From positions 1 to 64,000 of IMG/VR virus record IMGVR_UViG_3300005613_000002: DNA of 64,000 nt. One strand, given 5' to 3'. The notes beneath the pieces are model-generated. The model was not told the origin of the DNA. It was given only the letters and a program-made list of their open reading frames with translations, and did not search any database. This document shows, piece by piece, positions 43,603 through 64,000 of the stretch. Numbering within the stretch: the first letter of the stretch is position 1; the number at the start of each line of letters is the position of its first letter. The translations under genes were made by a program, and so were the position numbers.

Positions 43603-43835
43603 ATTTATTAAATCCTGTAATTTTAATTAATACTTTATGTTTCTCTCTTTTCAGTAGCGTACATATCTCGTTAATCCTAAATTACAGAATTATTTTTTTA
43701 AATCTAAGCACCATGCCATTTCATAGGTATTAAAACCGCCAAAATTGGGGGTCTGCTTAAATTTATTTCATTATTTTAAAGAACTTTAAGCCAGTTACGT
43801 TTACATAAAGTAAAGAGGCTTTACTGACTATCATG

Positions 43836-43923
43836 TAGCGGGAGAGGGATTCGAACCCCCGTTAAACCTTATTCAGGACTCCGTGCTTATGAGACAGGTG
43901 AGATACCGCTTCTCCATCCCGCA
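43836..43923 (-). tRNA. tRNA with CAU anticodon (Met or Ile2) and a 20-nt variable arm; no encoded CCA
   Basis: UGCGGGA/UCCCGCU acceptor, GAG/CUC D stem, CUCAUAA loop, GGGGG-UUCGAAU-CCCUC T arm. Confidence 0.75.
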
Positions 43924-43937
43924 ATATATTTTTTATA

Positions 43938-44064
43938 AAAGGATAGTTTATTTGTTATATGTTGTTTTTACAAAGTTGGATTTGAACCAACGGCATACTG
44001 CTTATAAGGCAATCACTCTAACCGACTGAGTTATTTGTTACTGTAATAACAATTAGTTTCCTTT
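43938..44064 (-). ncRNA. Element A: tRNA-Ile(UAU)-like cloverleaf (43967-44040) whose acceptor stem is extended by the conserved stem
   Basis: ACUC/GAGU D stem, AUUGC-CUUAUAA-GCAGU, GUUGG-UUCAAAU-CCAAC; outer AAAGGA/UCCUUU and UUGUUAU/AUAACAA pairs. Confidence 0.8.
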
Positions 44065-51933: not shown

Positions 51934-53892
51934 TTATTTAATATTATTTTTAATTAAAATTTGAACTGCTTCTTTTTTTGACATACCATCATTAAAACCT
52001 CTATTATTTAATACCTGTCTTGCAGTCTTTATTTCTTCTTCATTAATTAATGGTTTATCATCATTTTTTTCTTCGGTTAATTTTCTCATAAAACCTAAAC
52101 TTCTAGTATCAGTTTCTTTTGTACCTCCTTGACCCCTAAGAGTGACACCACCTTTTACTTTCCCATCAACAGAAAATTCATTTCCGTTAGCATCTTCATA
52201 TCTATCACCAACATTACCTTGATATTCCTCATAATTATCATCTTCATCTATTGCTTTATTAACACCCTTTTCATCAGTATTTAATTTAGATAAATCATCT
52301 TCAGTTCCATCATTATCTAATATATCACTCAATGGATGGTCATCACCTACGTTTTTTGGTGAATATCCAAGTAAAACATCTTCCATTTCTTCTTGTGATT
52401 TATCTGAATCATTACTAATTTCATTTTTATCAGGTTCATCACATTGACCACTTTCCATTTTATCTAACTTAGTATAATAATCTGGAATTTCAGTTAAATG
52501 GTCAATTGCTATCTCCATTGCAATCAATGGGTCATCAGTATGTTCTAATTCTACAGCTAGACCCCTAATTATTTGTCCTGTATCAAATTCTTTAGCAGAT
52601 TTATTATCACCCAAACCACCACTTAATTCATCACCAGTTTCTTCTTTCTCTTTTTCAATTTGATTAACTTCTGGCTCACTAATTTGAACTTCTAGCTCAT
52701 TTTCAGTATCTTTTTGAGCTACATCATCATCTTCACTGATATTAACACTAGTTTGTGTTTTTTTCTTTAGTGTTGGATATTTTGTTTTTGATTTAAATTT
52801 TTGTCCGATTGGGTCAGGGTAATCACTTTTTTGTCCAGTTTCATTTAATCCTGTACCACCCTCATTTCCTGTCGCTAAAAAATTCTCGTATATTTTAATT
52901 GATTCTTCTTTAATTTTTTTTAGAAATTCTTCATGAGTAAAATTTTTACTAGTCATACCATATTTACTCAATTCATCATTAATATTATGAATTGCTGTTT
53001 TTATCACATATTGTTTTTGTTCTTTAGTTAAATTACTCATATGTTTTCTAGCACTATAACCAATAATATTATTATCATCTTGAGTAGCTACATTATCTAA
53101 ATTTTCATTAGTTGACGATATTCTTTTAATTTCATCATTTATTTCAGAAGTTGTTAAAGAACCATGTGGTCTACCTTTTTTTCTGGTTAAATTATCAATT
53201 GCATTATTTATAATTGCTCTCTTATTCTCAGGTAAACTATCAACTGGTGAATTATTGTTTTCATCAACATATTTATTTAATTCAGGTGCTTGTACTCTAA
53301 CATCAGGATTTGTTGGTTTTTCATCAGCATATGCTTTACCAGTTTGTAATCTATCTGAACCACCACCAAATGGATATGAATCAATCTTTTTTACAGCATT
53401 CACATATTCTTCATCAATTTCTGGTTCTTTTTCATCATAATCAATATAATCATCAATTATATCAAATAACTGACTACCATATTTAGCATTAAAATCTTTC
53501 AAATCATTTTCTTCCATATCAACAGATTCACCACTAGCAATATCATCAAAACTAAAACTAGTTAATATTACATCATTAACATTATATACACCATCTTGAT
53601 CTCCCTCTGTAGCATTTGATTTAAATGTAAATGTTATATTATTACCATTATTATCTAAACATAATAATTCTACAAATGTATCATCATCATTTGTTTGTGT
53701 ATTACTTTGTTTAACCTTTATTTTTTTTGATAACAATCCATTAAATGCAAAATCTAAAACGCTTTTAGAATTTAAATTATTAGTAGTGTTACCCATGAAT
53801 TCATTAACACTTATTTTATTAACTCTTTCCATCATTTCGAAAAGACGTTCTTTACCATTATTATTTTTTTTATGTGTTTTCATTTTATTCAA
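51934..53892 (-). CDS. Acidic head-associated protein with DUF5661-like motif
   Basis: GLAVELEHT...AMEIAIDHLTEIPDYYTKL; D/E-rich. Confidence 0.55.
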   Translation of the reverse strand: MNKMKTHKKNNNGKERLFEMMERVNKISVNEFMGNTTNNLNSKSVLDFAFNGLLSKKIKVKQSNTQTNDDDTFVELLCLDNNGNNITFTFKSNATEGDQDGVYNVNDVILTSFSFDDIASGESVDMEENDLKDFNAKYGSQLFDIIDDYIDYDEKEPEIDEEYVNAVKKIDSYPFGGGSDRLQTGKAYADEKPTNPDVRVQAPELNKYVDENNNSPVDSLPENKRAIINNAIDNLTRKKGRPHGSLTTSEINDEIKRISSTNENLDNVATQDDNNIIGYSARKHMSNLTKEQKQYVIKTAIHNINDELSKYGMTSKNFTHEEFLKKIKEESIKIYENFLATGNEGGTGLNETGQKSDYPDPIGQKFKSKTKYPTLKKKTQTSVNISEDDDVAQKDTENELEVQISEPEVNQIEKEKEETGDELSGGLGDNKSAKEFDTGQIIRGLAVELEHTDDPLIAMEIAIDHLTEIPDYYTKLDKMESGQCDEPDKNEISNDSDKSQEEMEDVLLGYSPKNVGDDHPLSDILDNDGTEDDLSKLNTDEKGVNKAIDEDDNYEEYQGNVGDRYEDANGNEFSVDGKVKGGVTLRGQGGTKETDTRSLGFMRKLTEEKNDDKPLINEEEIKTARQVLNNRGFNDGMSKKEAVQILIKNNIK

Positions 53893-54331
53893 ATATTATA
53901 GGATTATTTTTACCAAAATCTCTCATTAATACTCCTGCAAGAGCATTTGCTTCATTTTCTTCATCACTACCCGTTTCTCCTGAATTCGGATTTAATTTAC
54001 CTTCTTTATCTTGTTTATTGTGAATGAATTCATGTGCAATTGTTCTTAAAATATCAGCTAAGTTTCTATTTATTGCAATAACAATAATTTTATTATCTTC
54101 AACCTGATATTGCCCAAACGATTTCATTTCTTGAGCTAATTTTTTATCATAGGAAAGTTCAACGCTTGGAAAATCACCATTTAATTCGAGTCTATCATTA
54201 AGAAATTTAACAAATTCAGTAACAATTTCATCTCTTTTTTCAGTTGATAATACTTCTTCGTTTAATTTATTAACTCTTTTCATCATTTGAAAGAGTCTTT
54301 CCTTAGAACCATGTGAATGATTGATTTTCAT
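53885..54331 (-). CDS. Zincin-like HExxH metallopeptidase
   Basis: LRTIAHEFIH..Q followed by E.EANA.AG. Confidence 0.7.
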   Translation of the reverse strand: MKINHSHGSKERLFQMMKRVNKLNEEVLSTEKRDEIVTEFVKFLNDRLELNGDFPSVELSYDKKLAQEMKSFGQYQVEDNKIIVIAINRNLADILRTIAHEFIHNKQDKEGKLNPNSGETGSDEENEANALAGVLMRDFGKNNPIIFE

Positions 54332-54333
54332 TA

Positions 54334-55041
54334 TTAAACATCATTAAAACTATTCTGTACATCACCTTTTGATTTTAATGGTAATTCATCAAAATCAGCA
54401 ATATATGTACCATCAGGTAATTCTCTAATTCCTTTACTTGCTTCTTTTTCACGTTGTTCATTAAACCAATTCCCAGACCAAAAATCATTCAAATTATAAT
54501 AATATGGATGTGAAACATTTTTCTTATCTACAAGTTTTTCAGTGTTTGTTGGTTCACGAACTTCTTCCACTTCAGCACTTAAATTAGTTAATTTACTATC
54601 TAATGCTGTTGTCATACTATTAAGACTTTCTAATTGGTCACTAATGCCCTTCATTGCCTCAATATTATGTTTAATTATTTCGTTTTGAATATCATCAACT
54701 TCTTCTGCTGGTTCAGCGTCTGGTATTGCTTCAACTGGTGGTTCTTCACCTGTTGATTGTTCTTCACTACCTTGGTCAAATTCAGGAACAGGAGGTTCAG
54801 CACCAATTGGTTTATCAGTACCTATAGGTTGGTCATTAGATGGTTCAGGGGGTTGTTTTCCACCATCTGGTTTAGGTGCATCTTCTTGGTCACCAACTTC
54901 AGTTAATGGTACATCATCAAATTCATCACCATCTTCAACTAATGGTTGATATTTAGGTGATTCATTAATTTTATAATCATAATTATATTTAATCTTTCTA
55001 AGATGTTCTTCGAAAAGATTTGATTTTTTTTCAGCTTCCAT
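54334..55041 (-). CDS. Acidic Pro/Glu-rich protein, scaffold-like
   Basis: P/E-rich linker and coiled-coil segment. Confidence 0.55.
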   Translation of the reverse strand: MEAEKKSNLFEEHLRKIKYNYDYKINESPKYQPLVEDGDEFDDVPLTEVGDQEDAPKPDGGKQPPEPSNDQPIGTDKPIGAEPPVPEFDQGSEEQSTGEEPPVEAIPDAEPAEEVDDIQNEIIKHNIEAMKGISDQLESLNSMTTALDSKLTNLSAEVEEVREPTNTEKLVDKKNVSHPYYYNLNDFWSGNWFNEQREKEASKGIRELPDGTYIADFDELPLKSKGDVQNSFNDV

Positions 55042-55228: not shown

Positions 55229-55264
55229 AGTACTTATTATTTTAATATAAATACTATGTTATAA

Positions 55265-55945
55265 TCATTTTGTCAAAAATGTGATTATATATCTTTTAAG
55301 TTGTTGGAATTTTGGAAGTTTTTTGTAGTAATTTTGATATGTTTCACCTTCCAAATCATCATATATATCTGTGGTTCTTTCACCGATTCTAGTTAATATT
55401 TCATCAATATTAAACTTAAAAAATTCATACATTTTAAGATTAATACCAGATATTTGATTCCCCTCTTTAAGGTCAATACTAGATGTTTGACCACCTTTTT
55501 CATGTTTTGATAAAATATAAAGCATTTCATTTTTATAATTATATATTGTATCAATTTTTTTAGGGAGAACATCCATAAGGTCTTCAATATATCCTAACTG
55601 AAAAAAAACTGGGTCTAAATTAACGTATGTATATTTTGGAGTAAAATAAAATTGAGGTATGAATTTAGTAAAATTATCTATCCCTTTAACATGTGATGAT
55701 CTATTTTCATCATAACTAAACTCCCAATATAACTCATTACCTACAATTTTGTTGTGTAATATGTTTGCATTTTGAATAATATCATTATCAGGATTACATT
55801 TTTTCATAAACAACCATCCAACATACAAAGTTGGTAGTGTTTTATCGATTTTATCATATTCAATTGGCTCATTATAGTAATTAATATAATCAACTTTAGT
55901 ATGATTAACTAAATCCTTTTCGTAAATAATATTAGCTATTTTCAT
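55265..55945 (-). CDS. Hypothetical protein
   Basis: 226-aa ORF; PTLYVGW motif; near-consensus Bacteroidota promoter upstream. Confidence 0.65.
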   Translation of the reverse strand: MKIANIIYEKDLVNHTKVDYINYYNEPIEYDKIDKTLPTLYVGWLFMKKCNPDNDIIQNANILHNKIVGNELYWEFSYDENRSSHVKGIDNFTKFIPQFYFTPKYTYVNLDPVFFQLGYIEDLMDVLPKKIDTIYNYKNEMLYILSKHEKGGQTSSIDLKEGNQISGINLKMYEFFKFNIDEILTRIGERTTDIYDDLEGETYQNYYKKLPKFQQLKRYIITFLTK

Positions 55946-56001: not shown

Positions 56002-56604
56002 TTATTTTGTTTCAAACTTATAACCATATTTATCAATTATTAGTTTATCTCTTTCCATAATAATTTCAATTGTTTTATCGTTATGATATTCACTATAATG
56101 TGAATGTTGTGAAGTATTTATCTTTTTAGTGTTATATAAAATTTCCTTTTGTTCTTCATTTAATGGAAAATTATTTTCATCAAAACATTTAATTAAATCT
56201 TCTTCTAAATTTTCAAATCTACATATAAAATCAGGATATATATTAAAGACTTTATTATGTCGAAAAGTATAGACACCAATATTGTCTCTATTACAAATAT
56301 TCATATTTATATCATGTAACATTCCCTTTTGTTCATACAATAATTCCATAAATTCTGGGAATGTTTTATTTTTTGAAAATTTACCATGAACATTAACACC
56401 AAATATATACCATGAAACATACCAATCAAACGGATTTCTTATTGTTCCGAAAATAAATTTATTTTTCGGTCTAACATTTAATCCTAAATGCTTTTGATGT
56501 GGATTCCACTTTGTTTTTGAAATATTATCATCTAAATATGTGCTAACAAACGTACCAGCACATTTTTGTAAATGAACATATATGAATTTTGGATGTCTAA
56601 CCAT
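56002..56604 (-). CDS. Sulfotransferase family 2-like protein
   Basis: FIYVHLQKCAGT (5'-PSB loop), F.TIRNPFDWYVS (3'-PB), RFENLEED. Confidence 0.8.
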   Translation of the reverse strand: MVRHPKFIYVHLQKCAGTFVSTYLDDNISKTKWNPHQKHLGLNVRPKNKFIFGTIRNPFDWYVSWYIFGVNVHGKFSKNKTFPEFMELLYEQKGMLHDINMNICNRDNIGVYTFRHNKVFNIYPDFICRFENLEEDLIKCFDENNFPLNEEQKEILYNTKKINTSQHSHYSEYHNDKTIEIIMERDKLIIDKYGYKFETK

Positions 56605-56607
56605 AAT

Positions 56608-57606
56608 TTATTTTTCTCTTAATATTTTACAAATTCTTTCAGCACTATGTCCATCACCAAATGGACTGTTATAATTAATCTCATAATCATTAATATGAGT
56701 TTGAAAAGTATCAAACAAATCTTCAGGTTTATCTATCATAAATGTACTTTGTCCTATCGCTTCTGGTCTTTCAGTTACTTTTCGACATGTTAAACATTTT
56801 TTATTAAAAAATGAACATTCTTCTTGAATCCCACCACTATCTGTAATAACTAATCTTGTTTTAACTAATAGTTTTAATAATTTATCATGTGACATTGGTT
56901 CAACCACTTTCACATATTTAAACATTTCTTTATATTTTTGTACATTAGGATTTGGATGTAATGGTAGGATGAATTCATAAGCAATATAATGTTCAGCTAT
57001 TTTTTCTAATTCCTTAAACCATTTTTCCATTTCAACATGATTTTCACGTCTATGCATTGTGATTAATATTTTATTCTTATATTCACAATCTTTTTTATAT
57101 GGTAATAAATTATCAAGAACTGTGTTACCAACATCATATTTTAATCCACCAATTCTTTCGTTATTTAAAACTTTTACTGCATTAAATGTTGGACATAGAT
57201 GAATATCAGTGATTTGTGATACTAATCTACGATTTTGTTCCTCTGGATATGGATTTGAGTTATCATATGTTCTTAAACCTGCTTCAAGATGAATTACTTT
57301 TATTCTATGATGAAATGCTGATAATGCGACAGCTAGTACTGATGTTGTATCACCCTGAACTAAAACATAATCAATGTCTTCTAAAATATTAGAAAATATT
57401 GACATTATAGATTTTACTATATTATCTAACCTATTATTATTATCATCAATAATATCGATATGATAATCTGCTTTCTTTTCTTTTAATAAATCTTTATGTT
57501 GTCCAGTAAATAGTGTAATATATTTAATATTATTTGAATCAAACTCATGCATTATTGATTTCAGTTTAATATATTCTGGTCTTGTTCCGTATGCTATTAA
57601 TATCAT
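56608..57606 (-). CDS. wecB: UDP-N-acetylglucosamine 2-epimerase
   Basis: GTRPEYIK, TGQH, VQGDTTS, HLEAGLR, T.HRREN, TDSGGIQEE, FGDG.SAERI. Confidence 0.93.
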   Translation of the reverse strand: MILIAYGTRPEYIKLKSIMHEFDSNNIKYITLFTGQHKDLLKEKKADYHIDIIDDNNNRLDNIVKSIMSIFSNILEDIDYVLVQGDTTSVLAVALSAFHHRIKVIHLEAGLRTYDNSNPYPEEQNRRLVSQITDIHLCPTFNAVKVLNNERIGGLKYDVGNTVLDNLLPYKKDCEYKNKILITMHRRENHVEMEKWFKELEKIAEHYIAYEFILPLHPNPNVQKYKEMFKYVKVVEPMSHDKLLKLLVKTRLVITDSGGIQEECSFFNKKCLTCRKVTERPEAIGQSTFMIDKPEDLFDTFQTHINDYEINYNSPFGDGHSAERICKILREK

Positions 57607-58178
57607 AATTTGATTTTTAATTCTTTTATTTGATTATATAAATCACCCAAGTCAATTTCTGATTTATTATTTAAATTATATTTTTTATCTGTTGTTCCAC
57701 AACCACCACTTCTATTCATTATCAAGTCAGTTGTTATAATTTCATTAGATAATTTATCAATATTAAATTTTTTGGAAACCAAATCGATAAACTTTTCTTC
57801 ATTACCTAATATGTCTTCATGAAAAACAATTATTACTTTTGATTCAAATTTATTAAAAAATTTAATATAATCAGCAATACCTCTTAAATAAATATCTATT
57901 ATTTCATTTTCTGAAAATCTTCTCCATTTTTTAAATGATGAAATAAAATTTCCACTTTCTTTTAAAACAATAATAAAATTTTCACCTAATTCTATATTTG
58001 GTTTACAATGTTTAGTTGCAATGAAACTGGTTTTAATGTATGAATCTTCAACATTTTTTGGTTTTTGAACTTTAGAATGCATTGATTTATAATTATTATC
58101 TAAATTATTTTTAATTAAAAACTCAACATAATTTGTTCCAGTTCTAGGTAACCCATATATTTGTATCTTATTCATCAT
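57603..58178 (-). CDS. Sulfotransferase-like P-loop protein
   Basis: IYGLPRTGTNY motif. Confidence 0.55.
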   Translation of the reverse strand: MMNKIQIYGLPRTGTNYVEFLIKNNLDNNYKSMHSKVQKPKNVEDSYIKTSFIATKHCKPNIELGENFIIVLKESGNFISSFKKWRRFSENEIIDIYLRGIADYIKFFNKFESKVIIVFHEDILGNEEKFIDLVSKKFNIDKLSNEIITTDLIMNRSGGCGTTDKKYNLNNKSEIDLGDLYNQIKELKIKL

Positions 58179-58791
58179 TCAATTTCTTTAATATTAAATA
58201 AACAATATTTAAACCACTATATGTTTCATTCACTGCAACAGAATTACTTCCATTCAATATACTCTCAACACGAACACATTTTTCATTCACTAATTCTTCT
58301 ATTTCAGGAAGATTTACCCTTGGATAATCAAAAGTAAGAATTAAATAGCCATTAGTTTTTACCTGTTTAAATAAATTATTAATTGCTTTTTTTCTTTCTT
58401 CTTCTTTTGGTATATGTTCTATTGTTGACACATTTAAAACAAAATCAAAAGTGTTTTCAAATTCTTTATTTTCTGTTGTAATATCATAATAGAAAGTATC
58501 TCTAACCTTTGATTCAGAAATATCAGAATGAACACATTCACCAATTTCAGTTAACATATCTCTAAATATAACATGCACTCCTTCAAAACCCCAAGAACTA
58601 TTATGTATTTTTGGTTTTATCCCATTTTTATTTTCATTAATGAAATCATTCACATATCTATATTCATATGGTCTTGACCACATTTTAGGTCTCACAAACT
58701 TTTCATCATAGACATCATTATTTGATGCAAATCTAAAATCTATTACTTTAAAATTATTCATCTTTTTATATTTTATAATCCAATATGCCAC
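58168..58791 (-). CDS. Class I SAM-dependent methyltransferase-like protein
   Basis: WSR.YEY, FDFVLNVSTIEHI, GYLILTFD. Confidence 0.65.
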   Translation of the reverse strand: MAYWIIKYKKMNNFKVIDFRFASNNDVYDEKFVRPKMWSRPYEYRYVNDFINENKNGIKPKIHNSSWGFEGVHVIFRDMLTEIGECVHSDISESKVRDTFYYDITTENKEFENTFDFVLNVSTIEHIPKEEERKKAINNLFKQVKTNGYLILTFDYPRVNLPEIEELVNEKCVRVESILNGSNSVAVNETYSGLNIVYLILKKLNDE

Positions 58792-59534
58792 AAAAATTTT
58801 TTATTTGTGTCAAATTTTATTTTTTCTTGCCAAACTCTTTGAGGTGGAAATGCTTCCCAATTATCAGCTATTGGTATTACTTCATCATTTAATGGAATTC
58901 TAACCTCATAACCCAAACCTAAATAACAATTAGTAAAAAGTGTTTCAGATTGACCAACTCCTGCATAATTTATTAAATTATTTCTTTCATCATATGGTAA
59001 TTTACCAAATTTCTTTTTCACTTTTTTCAATATTTCTTTAGTTGAAACACCAACACCACCTGAAACATGTTTTCTATTTAAATTATTCTCGAAATTTATA
59101 GATGTCAATGCTAAAAACCCTAATTTTTCATCAGAAAACTCATTAATTGCAATTTCGTAATATCTTGGGTATATTGTAATTAAATCATCTTCACAAAAAA
59201 ACCAAAAATCATAATCATTTTCAAAAAGATCAAAAGCATAGCTATATGCACCTAATGAACCACCTTTATTTTCTCTATTAAATACCATTATTTTTCCGCT
59301 TGGTATTTTTTTATTGTTAAGGGATTTAAGATATTCTTCACATTCATTAGTAATTTCATTTGATTGATTATTAATAATTATAACATCCATATTCTCAACA
59401 CCAGAATTCATTATTATATCATTATTAATATTTAACTTTAAAACAGAAAGTGTTTCATCAGCATTTGCTGGACTAGCTGAAGCAATCCCCCTTCTCGTCC
59501 CAAAATAAGTACAATAAATTTTACATGTTTTCAT
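58773..59534 (-). CDS. GT-A fold glycosyltransferase
   Basis: NRENKGGS.GAY, FFCEDD (DxD-like). Confidence 0.6.
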   Translation of the reverse strand: MKTCKIYCTYFGTRRGIASASPANADETLSVLKLNINNDIIMNSGVENMDVIIINNQSNEITNECEEYLKSLNNKKIPSGKIMVFNRENKGGSLGAYSYAFDLFENDYDFWFFCEDDLITIYPRYYEIAINEFSDEKLGFLALTSINFENNLNRKHVSGGVGVSTKEILKKVKKKFGKLPYDERNNLINYAGVGQSETLFTNCYLGLGYEVRIPLNDEVIPIADNWEAFPPQRVWQEKIKFDTNKKFLWHIGL

Positions 59535-60012
59535 AATCGCTCACTAATATTGACATTATTTTTGAATTAATCCACTCACCATTCTTTAATACTTCATCCC
59601 TTTTAATACCTTCATCAACAAATCCAAATTTTTTATATAATCTAATTGCTCTTTTATTTGTTTCCAGAACCTCTAGTGATATTTTATGTAGATTACATTC
59701 ATTAATAATTATAGGAATAAATTGACGATATGCTTCACTAGCATATCCTTTTCCTCTATAATCTTTATGGATATCAGCACCAATATAAATATTTTTATTT
59801 TCTTTAGACCAATTGCTTGTTCTGAAATAACCAATTGATTCACCATTTAACATTATAATAAAAAATAATGGCTTTGTATTAAAAAACCAATCGTAAGTTT
59901 CTTCTAATGAAAATTGACAAGAATTGTGTAAATATTCTTCACAACATTCGTTTCTAACCTCATTAAAAAATGGTATATCTTTATATGTTAATCTTCTAAT
60001 TCCTATTTTCAT
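59521..60012 (-). CDS. GNAT N-acetyltransferase (PseH-like)
   Basis: IH.DYRGKGYA, LEVLETNKRAI.LY.K.GF..EG. Confidence 0.88.
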   Translation of the reverse strand: MKIGIRRLTYKDIPFFNEVRNECCEEYLHNSCQFSLEETYDWFFNTKPLFFIIMLNGESIGYFRTSNWSKENKNIYIGADIHKDYRGKGYASEAYRQFIPIIINECNLHKISLEVLETNKRAIRLYKKFGFVDEGIKRDEVLKNGEWINSKIMSILVSDYENM

Positions 60013-60680
60013 TTTACTATATTTTGAATCGGTGTTATTAATTCATAATTATTTTCACTATCACAACTATAATCAATAATATTTCCTAAACTAAAAAAAG
60101 TTACACGATATTCATCTTTATAATCTTTAAGTCCAATATTATTATCTAATAAATATTTTGAAAAATTTAATTGATAATTACTATCAAACCAATCATTAAA
60201 ATCAACAGTTTTAATGATTTTTTTTATTGTCTTACTTGAAATAATTCCATTGGATATCCTACAATGGAATGGTAAATTAAAAGATTTATCATCACCAGCT
60301 AATGAACATAAATATGTACCTTCTTCATATAAATCAATCAATTTTTCATCAAAATTATCACAAGCTGGAACATAATCATCTTCAATTAAAATATGATAAT
60401 CAAAATCATCAACATAACGCTTTAATGCTGTTAACCATTGTCCATATGAAAAATATTTATTTTCACAATCAACAATTTGTATTCTATTATCTTCAGGAAT
60501 ATCATAATAAGAATTATTTACTTTTGATAATGGTTTCATTATAGTTATTTGTGAAATATTATTTCTCACATTATTTATCTGTTTAATATGATTATTCAAT
60601 ACTTTTTTATAATAAATCATATCAACAGCAGGTTTCACCCTTCTACCATTCCAAGTTGCAATAATATAATTAATTCTCAT
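60009..60680 (-). CDS. Putative GT-A glycosyltransferase
   Basis: N.YFSYG, HILIEDDY. Confidence 0.55.
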   Translation of the reverse strand: MRINYIIATWNGRRVKPAVDMIYYKKVLNNHIKQINNVRNNISQITIMKPLSKVNNSYYDIPEDNRIQIVDCENKYFSYGQWLTALKRYVDDFDYHILIEDDYVPACDNFDEKLIDLYEEGTYLCSLAGDDKSFNLPFHCRISNGIISSKTIKKIIKTVDFNDWFDSNYQLNFSKYLLDNNIGLKDYKDEYRVTFFSLGNIIDYSCDSENNYELITPIQNIVK

Positions 60681-60689
60681 ATGTATTAT

Positions 60690-61874
60690 TTACCACCCCT
60701 TTTTTATACAATCAACAATATATTCTCTTTCTTCTTTAGTTACCCACCAACCAACAGGAATACTTATTAATCTTGGAGTAATTTTATCGAGATTAGGAAG
60801 GATTGTCTTATAATCCCTAACACATGTATGAATATCATTTCTTTCATGAACCTGACTAACCATGATGTTACATTCTTTCATCCAATCCATGAATTCTTGT
60901 TTTCTATCAACATACATGGAGTAAATCCAAAATGCTGAATCCATTCTTGTGTCTCTTTCAAGTAATTCAACACCATTCACACCTTTCAATGCATCATCAT
61001 AATATTTAGCGTTTTCTTTATGTTTATTAATAACATTAATATCTACTTCTTTCAAATTCTCCATACCAATTGCAGCATTCACATCATTCATATGAAATTT
61101 ATAACCCCATTCTTCTATGTCTGCTTCACATCTAAAGTCTTTTTTATTATTATCCCTATCAATACCATACCAACGTAATAATTTTGCCCTTTTATATAGA
61201 TTATTATGTGGCAGTACTAATGCTCCACCATCTACGCTTGTAAAGTGTTTAATGGCTTGAAAACTGAAAGTACAGATGTTTCCATGACTACCAATTGGTT
61301 GTCCCTTAAATTGACTTCCAAATGCATGTGCGCAATCCTCTATAACACTTGGTTTAAACCCAAAATTAAATTCTGACCAATTTTGTATCTCTTTAATTCT
61401 ATCAAGATCAACAGGGTAACCACCCCAATGAACAAGCATAATTGCTTTAGTTTTAGATGTTATTTTTCTTGCAAGATCATCTAAATCCATATTTAATGTT
61501 TTAGGGTCAACATCTACCCATTTAATATTTAAATTATTTGCAAGAATTGGAAAATTACTAGCAGTGCATGTTAATGGTGTCGCAAGTACTTCATCACCAT
61601 CATTAATACCATCCCAATTATGATTAGTTTGATAATTATCATGTACCTGCATTCCTTTAAATGGTTTTTTTAATAAATGTAATGCTAGATGTTCAGCAGA
61701 TGTTGCTGAATTAGTTGTTACAACATAATCATTTTTAAATCTATCTTTTAGTTTTTCTTCAAATTCATCTACTTTCGGTCCTTGACCTATGTAACCTGAA
61801 TCTAAAACTGCCCCTGCAACATCTTTTGCAGTATTTGACATATAAACCTTAAACAATGGAATTATCTTTTTCAT
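60690..61874 (-). CDS. DegT/DnrJ/EryC1/StrS PLP-dependent sugar aminotransferase
   Basis: NSATSA.HLAL, VHWGG, IEDCAHAFG, FSFQAIKHFTSVDGG (PLP Lys), GYKFHM. Confidence 0.93.
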   Translation of the reverse strand: MKKIIPLFKVYMSNTAKDVAGAVLDSGYIGQGPKVDEFEEKLKDRFKNDYVVTTNSATSAEHLALHLLKKPFKGMQVHDNYQTNHNWDGINDGDEVLATPLTCTASNFPILANNLNIKWVDVDPKTLNMDLDDLARKITSKTKAIMLVHWGGYPVDLDRIKEIQNWSEFNFGFKPSVIEDCAHAFGSQFKGQPIGSHGNICTFSFQAIKHFTSVDGGALVLPHNNLYKRAKLLRWYGIDRDNNKKDFRCEADIEEWGYKFHMNDVNAAIGMENLKEVDINVINKHKENAKYYDDALKGVNGVELLERDTRMDSAFWIYSMYVDRKQEFMDWMKECNIMVSQVHERNDIHTCVRDYKTILPNLDKITPRLISIPVGWWVTKEEREYIVDCIKKGW

Positions 61875-61885
61875 CTTATTTTATT

Positions 61886-62605
61886 TTACCAAACACATAT
61901 TTTATTTAATGTTTTTGCACCTACATGATATCCTCTTGTTGGTTTCATTCCCATTTGAGTATCTAATGTAGAACCGATATCAATATAAGTATTATTTTTA
62001 TTCATAAAAACCCATAACTCATAAGTTAAGATATTAGCAAGAGGTCCTGCTGCAAAAAGAAATATTTTATCTTTAGAATTTTCATAATCTTTCATTATTT
62101 CACTAAACACATTATAATCCTTTAACCATGCATCAGTACCAACATGATATGTTTTTTCAACATTAAATGGTAATAATGAAGTATCTGCCTTATCATTTAC
62201 AACCATTACAATATCATGATTATTCATTTCTGGAACAAATTCAGATAAAAAACGTTTATAATTTGAATTAACATAAATATTTGCCCAAGTCAAATGTTCT
62301 TCATCTTGACATGACTTAGTTTTCATATATTTATATTTTTCCTGACCAACACAACAAGGACATGCAATACCAATATAATATCCATCATCAGTTGTCGTAT
62401 ATGAATATTCTAGTTTATTTCTAACACCAACATATTCATTCATATTTGGGTCATATCTAAATTCACCATTTTTTTGATTCCGTAAATCAATAAATTTATT
62501 TTCTAATATCATTAATTCACCATCACCCCATCGTGACAATGAAAAATGTTCATTAGACTTAATTTTATTTAAAAACTTATCAAAATCACCACCAAATGTT
62601 TTCAT
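61886..62605 (-). CDS. GT-D fold (DUF1792-like) glycosyltransferase
   Basis: FSLSRWGDGEL; FLFAAGPLA; IDIGS. Confidence 0.6.
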   Translation of the reverse strand: MKTFGGDFDKFLNKIKSNEHFSLSRWGDGELMILENKFIDLRNQKNGEFRYDPNMNEYVGVRNKLEYSYTTTDDGYYIGIACPCCVGQEKYKYMKTKSCQDEEHLTWANIYVNSNYKRFLSEFVPEMNNHDIVMVVNDKADTSLLPFNVEKTYHVGTDAWLKDYNVFSEIMKDYENSKDKIFLFAAGPLANILTYELWVFMNKNNTYIDIGSTLDTQMGMKPTRGYHVGAKTLNKICVW

Positions 62606-62606
62606 C

Positions 62607-63341
62607 TTATTTAATTTTATTTACAGTATCCCAACCACAATCAATACAATGAAAACAAACCTTATCTCTAACACCATAATGTGCGTTTTTTGTCCAAGAA
62701 GCATTTTCATCATTACCAAATTTCATCCCAACTTTAAAATCTGAACTCCACAAATTTTTATTACTAATTGGATGTGGTGGGACAAATGTATTAATACCTC
62801 CATACTTTTGTGCTAAATATGAAAACATAATATCTTCACCATTATCCCAAGTAAAAGGTTCTTCATACCATAAATATTTTGCCCATTCTTGTCTAAAAAA
62901 CCAAGCATGACCAACTAAATCTACACGTTTTGTTTTATTTAATTGTTCACCATTCCATCCAATTTTATCGAAAGGTAAATATGATTTCCCTTTAATAATA
63001 ACACCACTACCACCAAGAATACCATTTGTTTCAGGATTTTCAATTGTTTCAAGACAATTCTTTAACCAATCTTTTTGTGGTATTGTATCATCATCAAACA
63101 TCGCAACATATGGAGTTTTCAATAATAATGGAACTGTAAATCTTCCAAAAAATTTAGTATTCCAATTACACGTATATGTTTTTATTTCTTTATCTTTTGG
63201 AAGATATTGTCCAACATCACTTTTATTATACCAAACATGAATATTTTCACTCTTTACTTCAATTGATTGATCTTTAATTGCTTGAATCTGTTGTTCAAGT
63301 GTGTGTGGTCTTTTATAAACATTTAATATTACACTTACCAT
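62607..63341 (-). CDS. GT2-family glycosyltransferase
   Basis: VILNVYKR, MFDDDTIP, VDLVGHAW, GEDI.FS. Confidence 0.8.
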   Translation of the reverse strand: MVSVILNVYKRPHTLEQQIQAIKDQSIEVKSENIHVWYNKSDVGQYLPKDKEIKTYTCNWNTKFFGRFTVPLLLKTPYVAMFDDDTIPQKDWLKNCLETIENPETNGILGGSGVIIKGKSYLPFDKIGWNGEQLNKTKRVDLVGHAWFFRQEWAKYLWYEEPFTWDNGEDIMFSYLAQKYGGINTFVPPHPISNKNLWSSDFKVGMKFGNDENASWTKNAHYGVRDKVCFHCIDCGWDTVNKIK

Positions 63342-64000
63342 AATTTACCTATATATTTTTGAGTATATACACCACCTTGCCCATCAATTCTAACATCACC
63401 ATGTAATTTTGAATCACCATTACCATCATGATAAACTAACGAATTTTCAGTTCTATATATCTCGTTATTTAAATAACCAATTGCGTCACCAATTTGAGTC
63501 CAAGCACGAACAGGGACTCCAGCTTTACAAACTTCATCAGCATTAACCTCAAGCATTTTATATTCCATAAACTCAATTACATCAATATCAATTAATGCAA
63601 TTCCATCAACAAAATGCTTATTTGACCACCAACTTTCGAATTCAGATGTTTCATTAAATGACCATAAATGTGGTGCTATCGCCATTATATTGCTGTTTTT
63701 TTCTTTTTTATTAAAAAATAAATCTGTTAATACATTTAAGAAATCTTTTGATAATATAAAATCATCATCCATCTGTAATACAGCATGACATTTTACTTCT
63801 TTTAAAATTTCCCACATCTGATTATAACAATACCAATGCAATACTTTTCCATTTGGTTTTTCATTTTTTATATAATGAATATTAGGATAAATATTAAGTA
63901 AATTATCATATCTTTCATCATCAGAACCATCATTTAATAATACTAATTTAAATGTATATTTTGTTGGTTCATTATATAATTGTGAAATAATTCTTTCTAC
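63335..64000 (-). CDS. Partial GT2-family glycosyltransferase; true start lies beyond the window
   Basis: The frame stays open upstream of the track's 63841 start: VERIISQL...LLNDGSDD...; QMDDDF DxD motif. Confidence 0.78.
   Translation of the reverse strand, partial: VERIISQLYNEPTKYTFKLVLLNDGSDDERYDNLLNIYPNIHYIKNEKPNGKVLHWYCYNQMWEILKEVKCHAVLQMDDDFILSKDFLNVLTDLFFNKKEKNSNIMAIAPHLWSFNETSEFESWWSNKHFVDGIALIDIDVIEFMEYKMLEVNADEVCKAGVPVRAWTQIGDAIGYLNNEIYRTENSLVYHDGNGDSKLHGDVRIDGQGGVYTQKYIGKLW

What the first reader, a model, noticed from the sequence alone, without database searches (positions are those of the whole stretch)
56002..64000. Phage-encoded glycan synthesis and decoration island
At least 11 contiguous genes: WecB epimerase, DegT aminotransferase, GNAT acetyltransferase, a methyltransferase-like protein, two sulfotransferase-like proteins and about 5 glycosyltransferases. 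DegT+GNAT pairs make N-acetylated amino-deoxy sugars, and WecB interconverts UDP-GlcNAc/ManNAc. Inference: a sulfated or methylated glycan is built on virion proteins or on the host surface (superinfection exclusion). No flippase or polymerase is visible in the window.
Basis: partly seen in the sequence, partly recalled or inferred. Interest (0 to 1): 0.6.

Follow-up and report, generated by a model that had tools for sequence, protein, structure and literature searches.

The report
Variable glycan-building locus of a huge phage
A 322-kb uncultured tailed phage carries a 13-gene block of soluble sugar-modifying and sugar-transferring enzymes, two of them sulfotransferase-like, next to its baseplate genes; sister phages hold different enzyme sets at the same place, which suggests that each phage makes its own glycan, most likely on its virion.

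Summary
Window 56002-64000 (minus strand) has 11 tightly packed genes: a Sulfotransfer_2 protein, WecB, a second short sulfotransferase-fold protein, a class I methyltransferase-fold protein, a GNAT, a DegT aminotransferase and five glycosyltransferase-like proteins. The block runs past the window end to about 65673 of the 321,624-base phage genome, adding two more GT2-type genes (13 enzymes, 7 GT-like).

No island protein has a membrane segment. The whole phage has no flippase- or polymerase-sized membrane protein, phosphoglycosyl transferase, SDR dehydratase or nucleotidyltransferase. The only strong copy of the motif that precedes portal, terminase, tail-fibre and baseplate genes lies upstream at 69261, ahead of a 1058-aa baseplate-neighbour gene. 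No other strong copy follows until 55254.

Four sister huge phages share both flanks but differ inside: the DegT-GNAT-GT module is in 3 of 5, a heptose-like module in 3 of 5, and the sulfotransferases only here.

Best reading (about 0.45): late cytoplasmic assembly of an N-acetyl-amino-sugar-containing, methylated and sulfated oligosaccharide on virion proteins, using host precursors. Host-surface remodelling remains possible. DNA glycosylation is unlikely, because the ThyA homologue has canonical residues. This is a new member of a known kind, and its target is untested.

The parts
56002..56604 (-). Sulfotransferase-like protein ST1 (200 aa). It is the last enzyme gene of the block and is absent from all four sister phages.
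   Evidence: Pfam Sulfotransfer_2 scores 26.8 bits against a cut-off of 22, and phrog_3347 gives E 1.4e-7. A KCAGT motif sits at residue 13. There is no orthologue in L014, L022, L034 or L035 and no tblastn match in 50,697 deposited phage records.
56608..57606 (-). WecB-type non-hydrolysing UDP-GlcNAc 2-epimerase homologue (332 aa).
   Evidence: TIGR00236 scores 236.2 bits against a cut-off of 210.15, while NeuC scores only 52.9. Pfam Epimerase_2 gives E 1.9e-70. The best PDB matches are 6vlb and 5enz. Orthologues are present in 3 of the 4 sister phages.
57603..58178 (-). Short sulfotransferase-fold protein U1 (191 aa).
   Evidence: The protein has a PRTGTN loop at residues 11-16. G14, T15, K56 and H57 are invariant in 52 aligned sequences. 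22 of 52 match PF13469. The family profile hits the CurM sulfotransferase 4gbm at E 2.8e-4 and TPST1 at E 7e-4. An AF2 model has pLDDT 94.3, and nearly all its top Foldseek neighbours are PAPS sulfotransferases at probability 0.9-0.99, although E is only 5e-3 and TM about 0.45. Relatives lie inside similar islands in L016 and L024.
58168..58791 (-). Class I SAM-methyltransferase-fold protein (207-aa ORF; probably 197 aa from the ATG at 58761).
   Evidence: Methyltransf_11 scores 21.2 bits, exactly the cut-off. 93 homologues were found, several named SAM-dependent methyltransferase by JGI. The AF2 model has pLDDT 96.5 and matches methyltransferases at probability 1.0, including the sugar O-methyltransferases RebM and AtmM. 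Motif I is non-canonical (IHNSSWGFEG), so activity is not shown.
58773..59534 (-). Glycosyltransferase U2 (253 aa): GT-A-like, with an EDD motif at residues 115-117, and so far found only on phage DNA.
   Evidence: 15 of 25 family members match PF00535 and 9 of 25 match PF13712. The protein is fused to the GNAT as a single 437-aa ORF in L009. One genome for each of 185,579 species gave only two hits, both on MAG contigs that look like phage DNA.
59521..60012 (-). GNAT N-acetyltransferase (163 aa).
   Evidence: Acetyltransf_1 gives E 7e-17. The best NCBIfam match is PseH at 48.9 bits, below its cut-off of 93.1.
60009..60680 (-). GT-A-like protein U3 (223 aa), a distant paralogue of U2 with an EDD motif at residues 100-102.
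   Evidence: hhalign against the U2 family gives probability 64% and E 6.7e-5 across the motif region. Atlas structure neighbours are GT2 and RgpF clusters and the viral GNAT-fusion cluster, with TM 0.6-0.8. Orthologues occur in L016 and L022.
60690..61874 (-). DegT/DnrJ/EryC1/StrS sugar aminotransferase (394 aa).
   Evidence: Pfam scores 252 bits. The PLP-binding lysine K209 is present. The closest solved structures are 4zwv and 4xau at 398 bits and CalS13 (4zas) at 367 bits, far above ArnB at 115 bits. PseC scores 210.7 bits, below its cut-off of 423.5. The protein is 55% identical to the aminotransferase of the cultured Flavobacterium phage vB_FspM_immuto.
61886..62605 (-). GT-D-like (DUF1792-type) glycosyltransferase (239 aa).
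   Evidence: GT-D-like scores 26.3 bits and GT-D 25.2 bits, both just under the cut-off of 27. TIGR03728 gives E 9e-8. A four-sequence profile hits only the DUF1792 structures 4phr/4pfx (E 2.2e-4) and 5v4a. The GDGE motif is invariant.
62607..63341 (-). GT2 glycosyltransferase (244 aa) with DDD at residue 83; among the better-conserved enzymes of the locus (70-80% identity in 3 of the 4 sister phages; absent from L022).
   Evidence: PF00535 scores 30.2 bits against a cut-off of 23.3. Identity to the orthologues in L014, L034 and L035 is 70-80%.
63335..64000 (-). 3' two-thirds of a GT2 gene that is cut by the window end. The full gene is genome 63335-64336 (333 aa).
   Evidence: PF00535 scores 41.9 bits on the full protein. 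See also the genome search.

Best explanation
The block (genome 56002-65673, 13 genes) is a self-contained set of cytoplasmic enzymes.

**Proposed steps**
1. WecB converts UDP-GlcNAc to UDP-ManNAc.
2. DegT aminates a host-made NDP-4-keto-sugar, most plausibly a 4-keto-6-deoxyhexose.
3. The GNAT acetylates the resulting amino group.
4. The phage-restricted GT-A enzyme U2 is the likely transferase for that N-acetyl-amino sugar, because it always lies beside these two genes and is fused to the GNAT in other phages.
5. Up to six further transferases (four GT2-type, one GT-D-like and U3) extend an oligosaccharide.
6. A methyltransferase-fold protein and two PAPS-type sulfotransferase-fold proteins decorate it, using host SAM and host PAPS.

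The genes appear to be co-transcribed late with a 1058-aa baseplate-neighbour protein. The most likely acceptor is one or more virion proteins glycosylated in the cytoplasm before or during assembly. Sister phages swap modules at this fixed locus, so each would display a different glycan.

**Shown:** the gene content, the protein folds and families, the lack of membrane segments, the absence of export machinery, the conserved position of the locus, and its variable content.

**Inferred:** the substrates, the order of steps, the timing of expression, and the acceptor.
For: **Enzyme identities:**

**Soluble, with no export machinery**
- No hydrophobic 19-mer in the 13 enzymes exceeds 1.51 on the Kyte-Doolittle scale.
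- No phage protein has more than 5 hydrophobic segments.
- Bac_transf has no hit.

**Dependence on host precursors**
- PF01370 and PF02719 (SDR dehydratases and epimerases) have no hits.
- NTP_transferase has no hit.
- The only APS_kinase signal is a 20.8-bit hit on a generic 141-aa phage 'kinase'.

**Late unit**
- The motif AGTATTTATA lies about 22-25 nt before start codons. 55 of its 92 genomic copies are upstream of genes and in the sense orientation.
- It precedes the portal, large terminase, tail fibre and baseplate hub genes.
- On the minus strand, strong copies lie at 73359, 72205 and 69261, and then none until 55254.
- Gaps between genes across the unit are -14 to +66 nt.
- No convincing minus-strand terminator lies inside the block.

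**Link between the GNAT and U2:** a single-ORF fusion in L009 and a 102-member viral cluster of such fusions in the Atlas.

**GT-D family:** its only solved relatives are DUF1792 enzymes. From my own knowledge, these extend O-glycans on serine-rich bacterial adhesins in the cytoplasm.

**Fixed locus, variable content:** the locus is bounded by the same flanking genes in L014, L022, L034 and L035 (104-aa gene 73-80% identical; 226-aa gene 50-63% identical), but the content differs.

**Precedents:** virion glycosylation in mycobacteriophages (Freeman 2023, as cited in PMC12619734) and autonomous glycosylation in giant viruses (PMC10117803, PMC4691112).
Against: - No glycan, glycoprotein or transcript has been observed. 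No sequencing run could be listed.
- In more distant phages the same core genes sit among replication and nucleotide-metabolism genes rather than structural genes (L016 near dUTPase and PhoH; L017 near gp32, MazG and RecA). Linkage to the baseplate is therefore not general.
- Peripheral O-antigen glycosyltransferases also lack membrane segments, so solubility does not exclude action on host lipid-linked intermediates.
- The 'late' label of the promoter motif rests on a handful of recognisable structural genes. The motif also precedes genes of unknown role.
- The GT-D match is just under Pfam's cut-off.
- The methyltransferase-fold protein has a non-canonical SAM motif I.
Confidence: 0.45

Rival explanations
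1. The enzymes remodel the host cell surface. The soluble phage transferases would act at the inner face of the membrane on host undecaprenyl-phosphate-linked O-antigen, capsule or cell-wall glycan intermediates. The host's own flippase, polymerase and ligase would then export the altered glycan. The result could block adsorption of competing phages, or of progeny to lysing cells, or change recognition by grazers.
For: This is the customary reading of similar clusters in marine myoviruses, where they are called 'cell wall synthesis and modification' genes (PMC12801897). The WecB + DegT + GNAT combination resembles the sugar-nucleotide part of enterobacterial common antigen and O-antigen loci (plus my own knowledge). 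Most bacterial O-unit glycosyltransferases are also free of membrane segments. In L016 and L017 the cluster is not next to structural genes.
Against: The complete 322-kb genome has no initiating phosphoglycosyl transferase, flippase, polymerase, ligase or any protein with more than 5 hydrophobic segments. A 7-transferase product would therefore have to be accepted by host export enzymes that are usually substrate-selective. The block appears to lie in a late unit behind baseplate genes, which leaves little time for surface turnover in a lytic cycle. The U2 glycosyltransferase family was not found in any bona fide bacterial genome.
Confidence: 0.25
2. The enzymes hypermodify the phage DNA. The transferases would build an oligosaccharide on a hydroxylated pyrimidine in phage DNA to block host nucleases, as in the T-even phages, RB69, DLP3 and RL38J1.
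For: Phage glycosyltransferases that build mono- to tri-saccharides on DNA, together with phage-encoded sugar-nucleotide enzymes, are established (PMC13326640). In L016, L017 and L009 the core genes lie next to nucleotide-metabolism genes: dUTPase/DCD, MazG, and QueF-like plus GMP-reductase-like proteins. The phage has one thymidylate-synthase homologue with an unusual insertion.
Against: That homologue keeps Leu143, Asp169 and Asn177 (E. coli numbering), as seen in LPSCH and RSNDFFLGQPYNMASY. This is the signature of an ordinary dTMP synthase. It is not the signature of dCMP hydroxymethylases (N177D, L143D/E) or of 5-hydroxy-dCMP synthases (D169N), according to PMC13326640. No C5 cytosine methylase was found. 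No TET/JBP hit was found either, but the control for that search was silent, so it counts as weak evidence. Amino-sugar, sulfate and GT-D chemistry are not known on DNA.
Confidence: 0.07
3. The target is another soluble acceptor, or the block has a purely metabolic role. The enzymes might glycosylate or sulfate a small molecule or a non-virion phage or host protein, or they might only divert host sugar-nucleotide pools.
For: The closest solved relatives of the DegT come from natural-product sugar pathways (CalS13 and 4xau). The nearest sequence matches of U1 include the CurM polyketide sulfotransferase. No acceptor has been identified.
Against: Seven transferases in series, at a locus that is conserved in position but varies in modules between sister phages, fit a displayed and diversifying glycan better than a metabolite. 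No polyketide, NRPS or aglycone genes lie nearby.
Confidence: 0.1

Closest known systems
Glycan ('LPS' or cell-wall synthesis) gene clusters of marine T4-like cyanophages (P-SSM2, S-SCSM1, S-SCSM2R)
   Same: These are large lytic marine myoviruses that carry many glycosyltransferases together with sugar-nucleotide enzymes in clusters. The function has never been tested. The same three hypotheses are discussed for them: host surface, DNA and virion (PMC12801897).
   Different: The cyanophage clusters include SDR epimerases or dehydratases, KdsA/B and RmlC. This phage has no SDR enzyme at all. It has instead a DegT-GNAT-GT module, a GT-D-like enzyme and two sulfotransferase-fold proteins. Its locus lies in an apparent late unit next to baseplate genes and behaves as a swappable cassette among sister phages.
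Autonomous fibril and capsid glycosylation of giant viruses (Mimivirus/Megavirinae, chloroviruses)
   Same: These viruses encode cytoplasmic pathways for bacterial-type amino sugars, using an aminotransferase, an N-acetyltransferase and a WecB-like 2-epimerase. They also encode several glycosyltransferases and methyltransferases. The clusters are clade-specific and variable (PMC10117803, PMC4691112; details of viosamine and the Mg534-536 genes are from my own knowledge).
   Different: Those are eukaryote-infecting viruses that encode their own 4,6-dehydratases, and their glycans are chemically proven. Here the virus is a tailed phage, the dehydratase is missing, sulfotransferase-like genes are added, and nothing has been shown chemically.
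Mycobacteriophage virion glycosylation (Freeman et al. 2023, cited in PMC12619734)
   Same: The glycosyltransferases are phage-encoded, lie beside structural genes, and modify virion proteins in the cytoplasm.
   Different: Those phages have one or two transferases and no sugar-nucleotide tailoring, methylation or sulfation genes. No sequence relationship to them was tested here.
Glycan island of the cultured Flavobacterium phage vB_FspM_immuto (NC_055915.1)
   Same: It is an aquatic myovirus with an 11-kb run of glycosyltransferases, a methyltransferase, an epimerase and an aminotransferase that is 55% identical to this DegT.
   Different: Only the DegT is shared at the BLAST level. That island follows the lysis genes, encodes its own nucleotide-sugar epimerase, and has no sulfotransferase, WecB, U2 or GT-D.
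Enterobacterial common antigen sugar-nucleotide genes (WecB, WecE, WecD)
   Same: The same trio of enzyme families is present: a 2-epimerase, a DegT-type 4-aminotransferase and a GNAT acetyltransferase. In that system they make UDP-ManNAc-derived and dTDP-4-acetamido-4,6-dideoxyhexose donors (my own knowledge).
   Different: WecE-type models score far below their cut-offs (TIGR02379 scores 117 against 435). There is no WecA, WecC, RffG/H, WzxE or WzyE.

Membership tests
WecB non-hydrolysing UDP-GlcNAc 2-epimerase (TIGR00236) | A full-length match above the curated equivalog cut-off, and a better match than to the hydrolysing NeuC type. | tested here: met
   TIGR00236 scores 236.2 bits against a cut-off of 210.15 over residues 2-331. 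NeuC scores 52.9 against 235.9. The cut-off does not separate WecB from 2-epimerases that act on other UDP-2-acetamido sugars (my own knowledge).
WecB non-hydrolysing UDP-GlcNAc 2-epimerase (TIGR00236) | Catalytic interconversion of UDP-GlcNAc and UDP-ManNAc. | not testable with these tools
   This needs an enzyme assay. The protein is about 40 residues shorter than the solved WecBs.
DegT/DnrJ/EryC1/StrS NDP-sugar aminotransferase | The Pfam domain above its cut-off, and a PLP-binding lysine rather than the histidine of the dehydrase branch. | tested here: met
   PF01041 scores 252.3 bits. K209 lies in FSFQAIKHF. The nearest solved structures are the aminotransferases 4zwv, 4xau and CalS13 at 367-398 bits.
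Pseudaminic acid pathway (PseB, C, H, G, I, F) | PseC and PseH at equivalog level, together with the PseB dehydratase. | tested here: not met
   PseC scores 210.7 against 423.5 and PseH 48.9 against 93.1. The genome has no PF02719 or PF01370 protein. NeuB-type synthase and CMP-transferase were not searched.
PAPS-dependent sulfotransferases | Sulfotransferase family membership with a 5'-phosphosulfate-binding loop. | tested here: met
   ST1: PF03567 scores 26.8 bits against a cut-off of 22, with a KCAGT loop. U1: family-level PF13469 matches in 22 of 52 sequences, profile hits to CurM and TPST1, a sulfotransferase-like model, and an invariant PRxGT loop. U1's own Pfam scan was negative, and its Foldseek E-values are weak (5e-3).
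PAPS-dependent sulfotransferases | Transfer of sulfate from PAPS to a sugar acceptor, and a PAPS supply. | not testable with these tools
The phage has no convincing APS kinase: a 20.8-bit P-loop hit whose phage homologues are labelled 'kinase'. ATP sulfurylase was not searched.
GT-D (DUF1792) glycosyltransferases | A Pfam GT-D or GT-D-like match above the cut-off, and the Asp-x-Glu metal motif. | tested here: inconclusive
   The scores of 26.3 and 25.2 bits fall just under the cut-off of 27. The four-sequence profile's only significant matches are the DUF1792 structures (E 2.2e-4), and GDGE is invariant.
Wzx/Wzy- or ABC-dependent surface-polysaccharide loci | An initiating phosphoglycosyl transferase, a flippase or transporter, and a polymerase or ligase. 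| tested here: not met
   PF02397 has no hit. No phage protein has more than 5 hydrophobic segments, and the one with 5 is only 160 aa. WecA-type PF00953 and ABC transporters were not searched by profile.
Phage DNA glycosyl-hypermodification systems | A route to a hydroxylated pyrimidine: a ThyA homologue with N177D plus L143D/E or D169N, or TET plus a C5 methylase. | tested here: not met
   The single ThyA homologue keeps L143, D169 and N177 (criteria from PMC13326640). PF00145 has no hit. PF12851 has no hit, but its control did not ring.
Virion glycosylation systems (mycobacteriophage type, giant-virus type) | A glycan covalently attached to virion proteins and dependent on the viral transferases. 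| not testable with these tools
   Only context is available: soluble enzymes, an apparent late unit with baseplate genes, and variable content at a fixed locus.
'Moraphage' lineage of large aquatic phages (PMC12619734) | Shared core orthologous groups, including four glycosyltransferase groups; some members carry DnaK/DnaJ. | not tested
   No HSP70 was found in this genome, but only 8 of 25 moraphages have one. No sequence comparison with moraphage genomes was possible.

The most novel reading that the evidence does not exclude
A clade of 320-360-kb aquatic phages keeps a serotype-like locus at a fixed place in a late baseplate operon. Modules are swapped at this locus: an amino-sugar module, a heptose-like module and a sulfation module. 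Each phage would therefore coat its virion (tail, baseplate or capsid proteins) with a different complex glycan. In this phage that glycan would be sulfated, which would be the first sulfated virion glycan of a bacteriophage. The glycan would affect adsorption, stickiness to marine polysaccharides, or evasion of host and grazer recognition.
Probability: 0.2. Interest if true: 0.8.

Novelty: new member of a known kind. Interest (0 to 1): 0.5.

Why it matters
Clusters of glycan genes in large marine phages have been noted for about twenty years, but their target has never been identified. This locus gives a sharper handle on the question.

- All 13 enzymes are soluble, and the complete genome lacks any export machinery.
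- The block sits behind baseplate genes, downstream of a promoter-like motif that is shared with the portal, terminase and tail-fibre genes.
- Five sister genomes show module swapping between identical flanks. That pattern is expected for a displayed glycan under diversifying selection.

The analysis also yields concrete experimental material. One item is a phage-restricted glycosyltransferase family that is tied, and sometimes fused, to the acetyltransferase of an amino-sugar pathway. Another is a family of minimal 160-190-aa sulfotransferase-fold proteins that recurs in phage glycan islands. A third is a cultured Flavobacterium phage with a related aminotransferase island, in which the question of virion, host surface or DNA could be settled.

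If virions are the target, glycan coats, possibly sulfated ones, would have to be considered in phage adsorption, in particle behaviour in seawater, and in the design of viral-fraction proteomics.

Tried and rejected
- **Cultured relatives.** tblastn of WecB, ST1, U1 and U2 against 50,697 deposited phage records gave only distant WecB hits and nothing for the other three.
- **U1 word search.** The word-based protein search found only U1 itself. The exhaustive search was needed to find relatives.
- **Single-sequence PDB searches** for U1, U2 and U3 found nothing useful. The U2 family profile also found nothing in the PDB.
- **U3 as an FkbM methyltransferase.** I suspected this because a same-length FkbM gene occupies a similar place in L009. 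BLASTP showed no similarity, so I dropped the idea. The two methyltransferase-like genes of L009 and of this phage are likewise unrelated at the BLAST level.
- **Pseudaminic or legionaminic acid pathway.** I considered this because the best NCBIfam hits were PseC and PseH. I rejected it because both score under half their cut-offs and the genome has no dehydratase.
- **Phage-encoded PAPS synthesis.** The only APS_kinase signal is a marginal P-loop hit on a protein whose phage homologues are generic 'kinases'.
- **Sigma-70-type promoter scan.** The count was no higher than in shuffled sequence, so I did not use it.
- **Expression evidence.** No sequencing run was listed for the stretch.
- **The 226-aa downstream gene (55265-55945).** PHROGs, Pfam and the Atlas gave nothing, and the Atlas model is poor, with pLDDT 0.32.
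- **Complex prediction** was not used, because there is no specific enzyme-acceptor pair to justify it.
- **Literature search for the immuto phage** found nothing relevant.

Full report
**What the replicon is.** The window is bases 1-64000 of a 321,624-base IMG/VR virus record with direct terminal repeats and an estimated completeness of 100%. The same contig exists in ENA assembly ERZ27256772. G+C is 27.5%, the standard genetic code fits, and about 523 ORFs cover 92% of the sequence. It is a tailed phage.
- The portal, large terminase and a tail-fibre protein are recognisable, as is a baseplate hub protein.
- The terminase is about 25% identical to T4-type gp17 of cyanophages.
- The genome carries about 45 tRNA genes.

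**The observation.** Searches show 11 minus-strand ORFs packed between 56002 and 64000, with gaps of -14 to +24 nt. In transcription order (high to low coordinates) they are as follows.
- **GT2, 63335-64336:** cut by the window end; PF00535 scores 41.9 bits on the full protein.
- **GT2, 62607-63341:**
- **GT-D-like, 61886-62605:** scores just under Pfam's cut-off. A four-sequence profile has the DUF1792 structures as its only significant PDB matches (E 2.2e-4), and the GDGE motif is invariant.
- **DegT, 60690-61874:** 252 bits, with Lys209 present.
- **U3, 60009-60680:** no Pfam hit. hhalign to the U2 family gives probability 64% and E 7e-5 over the EDD region. The Atlas structure neighbours are GT2 and RgpF clusters.
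- **GNAT, 59521-60012:**
- **U2, 58773-59534:** no Pfam hit of its own, but 15 of 25 family members match PF00535.
- **Methyltransferase-fold protein, 58168-58791:** Methyltransf_11 exactly at the cut-off. An AF2 model with pLDDT 96.5 matches class I SAM methyltransferases, including sugar O-methyltransferases, at probability 1.0.
- **U1, 57603-58178:** no Pfam hit. It has 66 relatives in the exhaustive search, and 22 of 52 aligned sequences match Sulfotransfer_3. Its profile hits the CurM and TPST1 sulfotransferases. Its model has pLDDT 94.3 and nearly all its top neighbours are PAPS sulfotransferases, although the Foldseek E-values are weak. The PRxGT loop is invariant.
- **WecB, 56608-57606:** TIGR00236 scores 236 bits against a cut-off of 210.
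- **ST1, 56002-56604:** Sulfotransfer_2 scores 26.8 bits against 22; phrog_3347.

**True extent.** The block continues beyond the window. A GT2 gene lies at 64361-64987 and a Glyco_tranf_2_5 gene (86 bits) at 64984-65673. Beyond these come:
- a 104-aa gene with a weak baseplate-wedge match;
- a large gene annotated as 1084 aa, more probably 1058 aa starting from the ATG at 69234;
- an 825-aa protein with four hydrophobic segments;
- a baseplate hub gene.

The locus therefore holds 13 enzymes, 7 of them glycosyltransferase-like, over 56002-65673.

**What the phage lacks.**
- Searches of the complete genome found no SDR epimerase or dehydratase (PF01370, PF02719).
- They found no sugar nucleotidyltransferase, no Bac_transf phosphoglycosyl transferase and no GT4.
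- The only APS-kinase-like signal is a 20.8-bit P-loop hit on a 141-aa protein whose phage homologues are labelled simply 'kinase'.
- None of the 13 enzymes has a hydrophobic 19-mer above 1.51 on the Kyte-Doolittle scale.
- No phage protein has more than five hydrophobic segments, so nothing resembles a flippase, polymerase, ligase or oligosaccharyltransferase.

The pathway must therefore take its NDP-keto-sugar, UDP-GlcNAc, SAM and PAPS from the host. All of its own steps are cytoplasmic.

**Chemistry that can be inferred.**
- The DegT is far closer to the solved aminotransferases 4zwv, 4xau and CalS13 (367-398 bits) than to ArnB (115 bits). It scores below the PseC cut-off. From my own knowledge, that subgroup aminates C4 of NDP-4-keto-6-deoxyhexoses or NDP-4-keto-pentoses.
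- With the adjacent GNAT, the expected product is an NDP-4-acetamido-4-deoxy sugar.
- U2 always lies next to these genes. In another viral contig (L009) it is fused to the GNAT in one 437-aa ORF. The Atlas holds a 102-member viral cluster of such fusions. I therefore propose U2 as the transferase for that sugar. This is an inference.
- WecB should supply UDP-ManNAc.
- The methyltransferase-fold and sulfotransferase-fold proteins are candidate decorating enzymes. Motif I of the methyltransferase-fold protein is non-canonical, so its activity is open.

**Expression context.**
- An 8-mer enrichment analysis of upstream regions found two motif classes. TTGTAACA followed by ACGTATAAT clusters before small genes at 186-272 kb. 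AGTATTTATA lies 22-25 nt before start codons.
- 55 of the 92 genomic copies of the GTATTTAT core lie within 80 nt upstream of a gene and in the sense orientation.
- AGTATTTATA precedes the portal, large terminase, tail-fibre and baseplate-hub genes and the 825-aa gene. I treat it as a late-type promoter. This is an inference.
- On the minus strand, strong copies lie at 73359, 72205 and 69261. The last is 24 nt before the ATG at 69234. The next strong copy is at 55254.
- The block contains no convincing minus-strand terminator.
- The large baseplate-neighbour gene, the 104-aa gene, the 13 enzymes and a 226-aa gene thus look like one late unit of about 14 kb.

**Comparative evidence.** U2 and the methyltransferase-fold protein led to four sister genomes:

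| Locus | Record | Length (bp) |
|---|---|---|
| L014 | ENA ERZ773360 | 326,016 |
| L022 | JBAZIW010000001.1, labelled a Candidatus Paceibacterota MAG | 362,763 |
| L034 | JGI 3300042261 | 339,914 |
| L035 | LR756498.1 | 331,854 |

All four share both flanks with this phage. On one side are the large protein (46-52% identical) and the 104-aa gene (73-80%). On the other are the 226-aa, 58-aa, 235-aa and 148-aa genes. Between the flanks the content differs.
- A backbone of Glyco_tranf_2_5, GT2 genes, GT-D, the methyltransferase-fold gene and WecB is common.
- The DegT-GNAT-U2 module is in 3 of the 5 genomes.
- A PfkB kinase + cytidylyltransferase-like + SDR epimerase module, which looks like ADP-heptose synthesis, is in L014, L022 and L034.
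- L022 carries GIY-YIG and HNH endonuclease genes inside the locus.
- The two sulfotransferase-fold genes occur only in this phage.

More distant phages (L016, L017/L018, L024, L009; G+C 28-41%) keep the core genes in other neighbourhoods, some among replication and nucleotide-metabolism genes. U1-type short sulfotransferases recur inside such islands in L016 and L024. In one genome for each of 185,579 prokaryote species, U2 was found only on two MAG contigs that are evidently phage DNA.

**Weighing the targets.**

*For virion proteins:*
- The enzymes are soluble and the phage encodes no export machinery.
- The block lies in an apparent late unit with baseplate genes.
- A GT-D-type enzyme is present. 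From my own knowledge, its solved relatives extend protein O-glycans.
- A further glycosyltransferase (window 8605-10005, phrog_7162, E 3e-32) lies in the tail-fibre block behind the same motif.
- The cassette-like variation suits a displayed structure.

*For host-surface remodelling:*
- This is the customary reading of similar cyanophage clusters (PMC12801897).
- O-unit transferases are generally soluble too.
- The core genes are not linked to structural genes in distant relatives.

*Against DNA glycosylation:*
- The only thymidylate-synthase homologue (92550-93674) keeps Leu143, Asp169 and Asn177. PMC13326640 shows that dCMP hydroxymethylases and 5-hydroxy-dCMP synthases differ at exactly these positions.
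- No C5 methylase was found.
- The TET/JBP search was negative, but its control was silent.

My estimates are virion proteins 0.45, host surface 0.25, another soluble acceptor 0.1, and DNA 0.07. The remainder is unassigned.

**Comparison with what is known.** The kind of feature is known. Glycan gene clusters occur in marine T4-like cyanophages (PMC12801897). Core glycosyltransferases occur in large aquatic 'moraphages' (PMC12619734). The cultured Flavobacterium phage vB_FspM_immuto has an annotated 11-kb glycosyltransferase island whose aminotransferase is 55% identical to this DegT. Virion glycosylation is proven in mycobacteriophages. Autonomous amino-sugar glycosylation is proven in giant viruses (PMC10117803, PMC4691112).

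Four things are particular here:
- the sulfotransferase pair;
- the phage-restricted U2 family and its fusion to the GNAT;
- the complete dependence on host keto-sugar;
- the fixed-locus, swappable-module architecture in a clade of 320-360-kb phages.

I file it as a new member of a known kind, with moderate interest. The interest would rise sharply if a sulfated virion glycan were demonstrated.

**Limits.** Nothing here shows that any enzyme is active, that the block is transcribed as proposed, or that any glycan exists. No sequencing run was listed, so no read-level evidence was obtained.

Noticed in passing
window 8605-10005 (-): This 466-aa protein matches phrog_7162 'glycosyltransferase' (E 2.9e-32). 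It lies inside the tail-fibre and structural block and is preceded by the late-type AGTATTTATA motif. Homologues lie beside glycan islands in other viral contigs (L024, L023).
   Followed up: partly
window 43835-44040 (-), and genome 122-160 kb: Two tRNA genes (Met-CAT, Ile-TAT) lie in the window. ARAGORN finds about 45 tRNA genes and a tmRNA-like gene in the whole phage genome, mostly at 122-160 kb. One is called tRNA-Pyl (CTA) at 159544-159617.
   Followed up: no
whole genome; examples at window 55254, 50401, 34153 upstream: There are two classes of upstream motif. AGTATTTATA lies 22-25 nt before start codons of structural and other genes, and 55 of its 92 copies are upstream and in the sense orientation. 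TTGTAACA, a spacer and ACGTATAAT lie before small genes clustered at 186-272 kb. They are probably late-type and early-type promoters.
   Followed up: partly
genome 92550-93674 (+) (L003 16550-17674): This thymidylate synthase homologue is 374 aa long and has an insertion of about 45 residues between the catalytic Cys region and the RS.D motif. It lies next to a dUTPase. The active-site signature is canonical (L143, D169, N177 in E. coli numbering).
   Followed up: partly
L009 9533-10846 (+): This is a single 437-aa ORF that fuses the GNAT to the U2-type GT-A domain, on a 42.6-kb viral contig (IMGVR_UViG_3300045738_001693). It lies next to a DegT (59% identical to the one here), an FkbM methyltransferase, a polysaccharide deacetylase, and QueF-like and GMP-reductase-like genes.
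   Followed up: partly
L022 (JBAZIW010000001.1, 362,763 bp); L023 and L017 ('Altibacter sp.' MAG contigs): These contigs are deposited as parts of bacterial MAGs (Candidatus Paceibacterota; Altibacter). They carry phage genes syntenic with this phage, or T4-like genes (gp32, RecA/UvsX, MazG). They look like phage genomes binned with bacteria.
   Followed up: partly
L022 5551-6099 and 14652-15788: GIY-YIG and HNH homing-endonuclease-like genes are inserted inside the glycan locus of a sister phage. One of them lies between the PfkB and cytidylyltransferase-like genes.
   Followed up: no
genome 69235-69703 (L002 13235-13703): A non-coding stretch of about 450 nt lies between the 825-aa gene and the large baseplate-neighbour gene. 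It contains a 10-bp-stem hairpin and the promoter-like motif at 69261. The 1084-aa ORF from TTG 69312 probably starts at ATG 69234 instead, giving 1058 aa.
   Followed up: partly
window 54334-55041 (-): This is a 235-aa acidic protein with a Pro/Glu/Asp-rich low-complexity N-terminal half. It is conserved (51-64% identical) just downstream of the glycan locus in all four sister phages. It has no family match.
   Followed up: no
window 53885-54331 (-) and 51934-53892 (-): A 148-aa protein has a weak IrrE/Peptidase_M78 match (E 5.5e-4). A 652-aa protein carries DUF5661 in the precomputed annotation. Both are conserved downstream of the locus in the sister phages.
   Followed up: no
genome 75635-76468 (+) and 299975-300775 (-): Two further GT2-like genes lie outside the island (PF00535 scores 22 and 45.9 bits). 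The phage therefore has at least 10 glycosyltransferase-like genes in all.
   Followed up: no
genome 148487-148912 (+) (L012 1498-1923): This 141-aa P-loop protein has a marginal APS_kinase match (20.8 bits). It is 42-48% identical to small 'kinase' genes of Xylella, Stenotrophomonas and Xanthomonas siphoviruses. One of those is annotated as adenylylsulfate kinase.
   Followed up: partly
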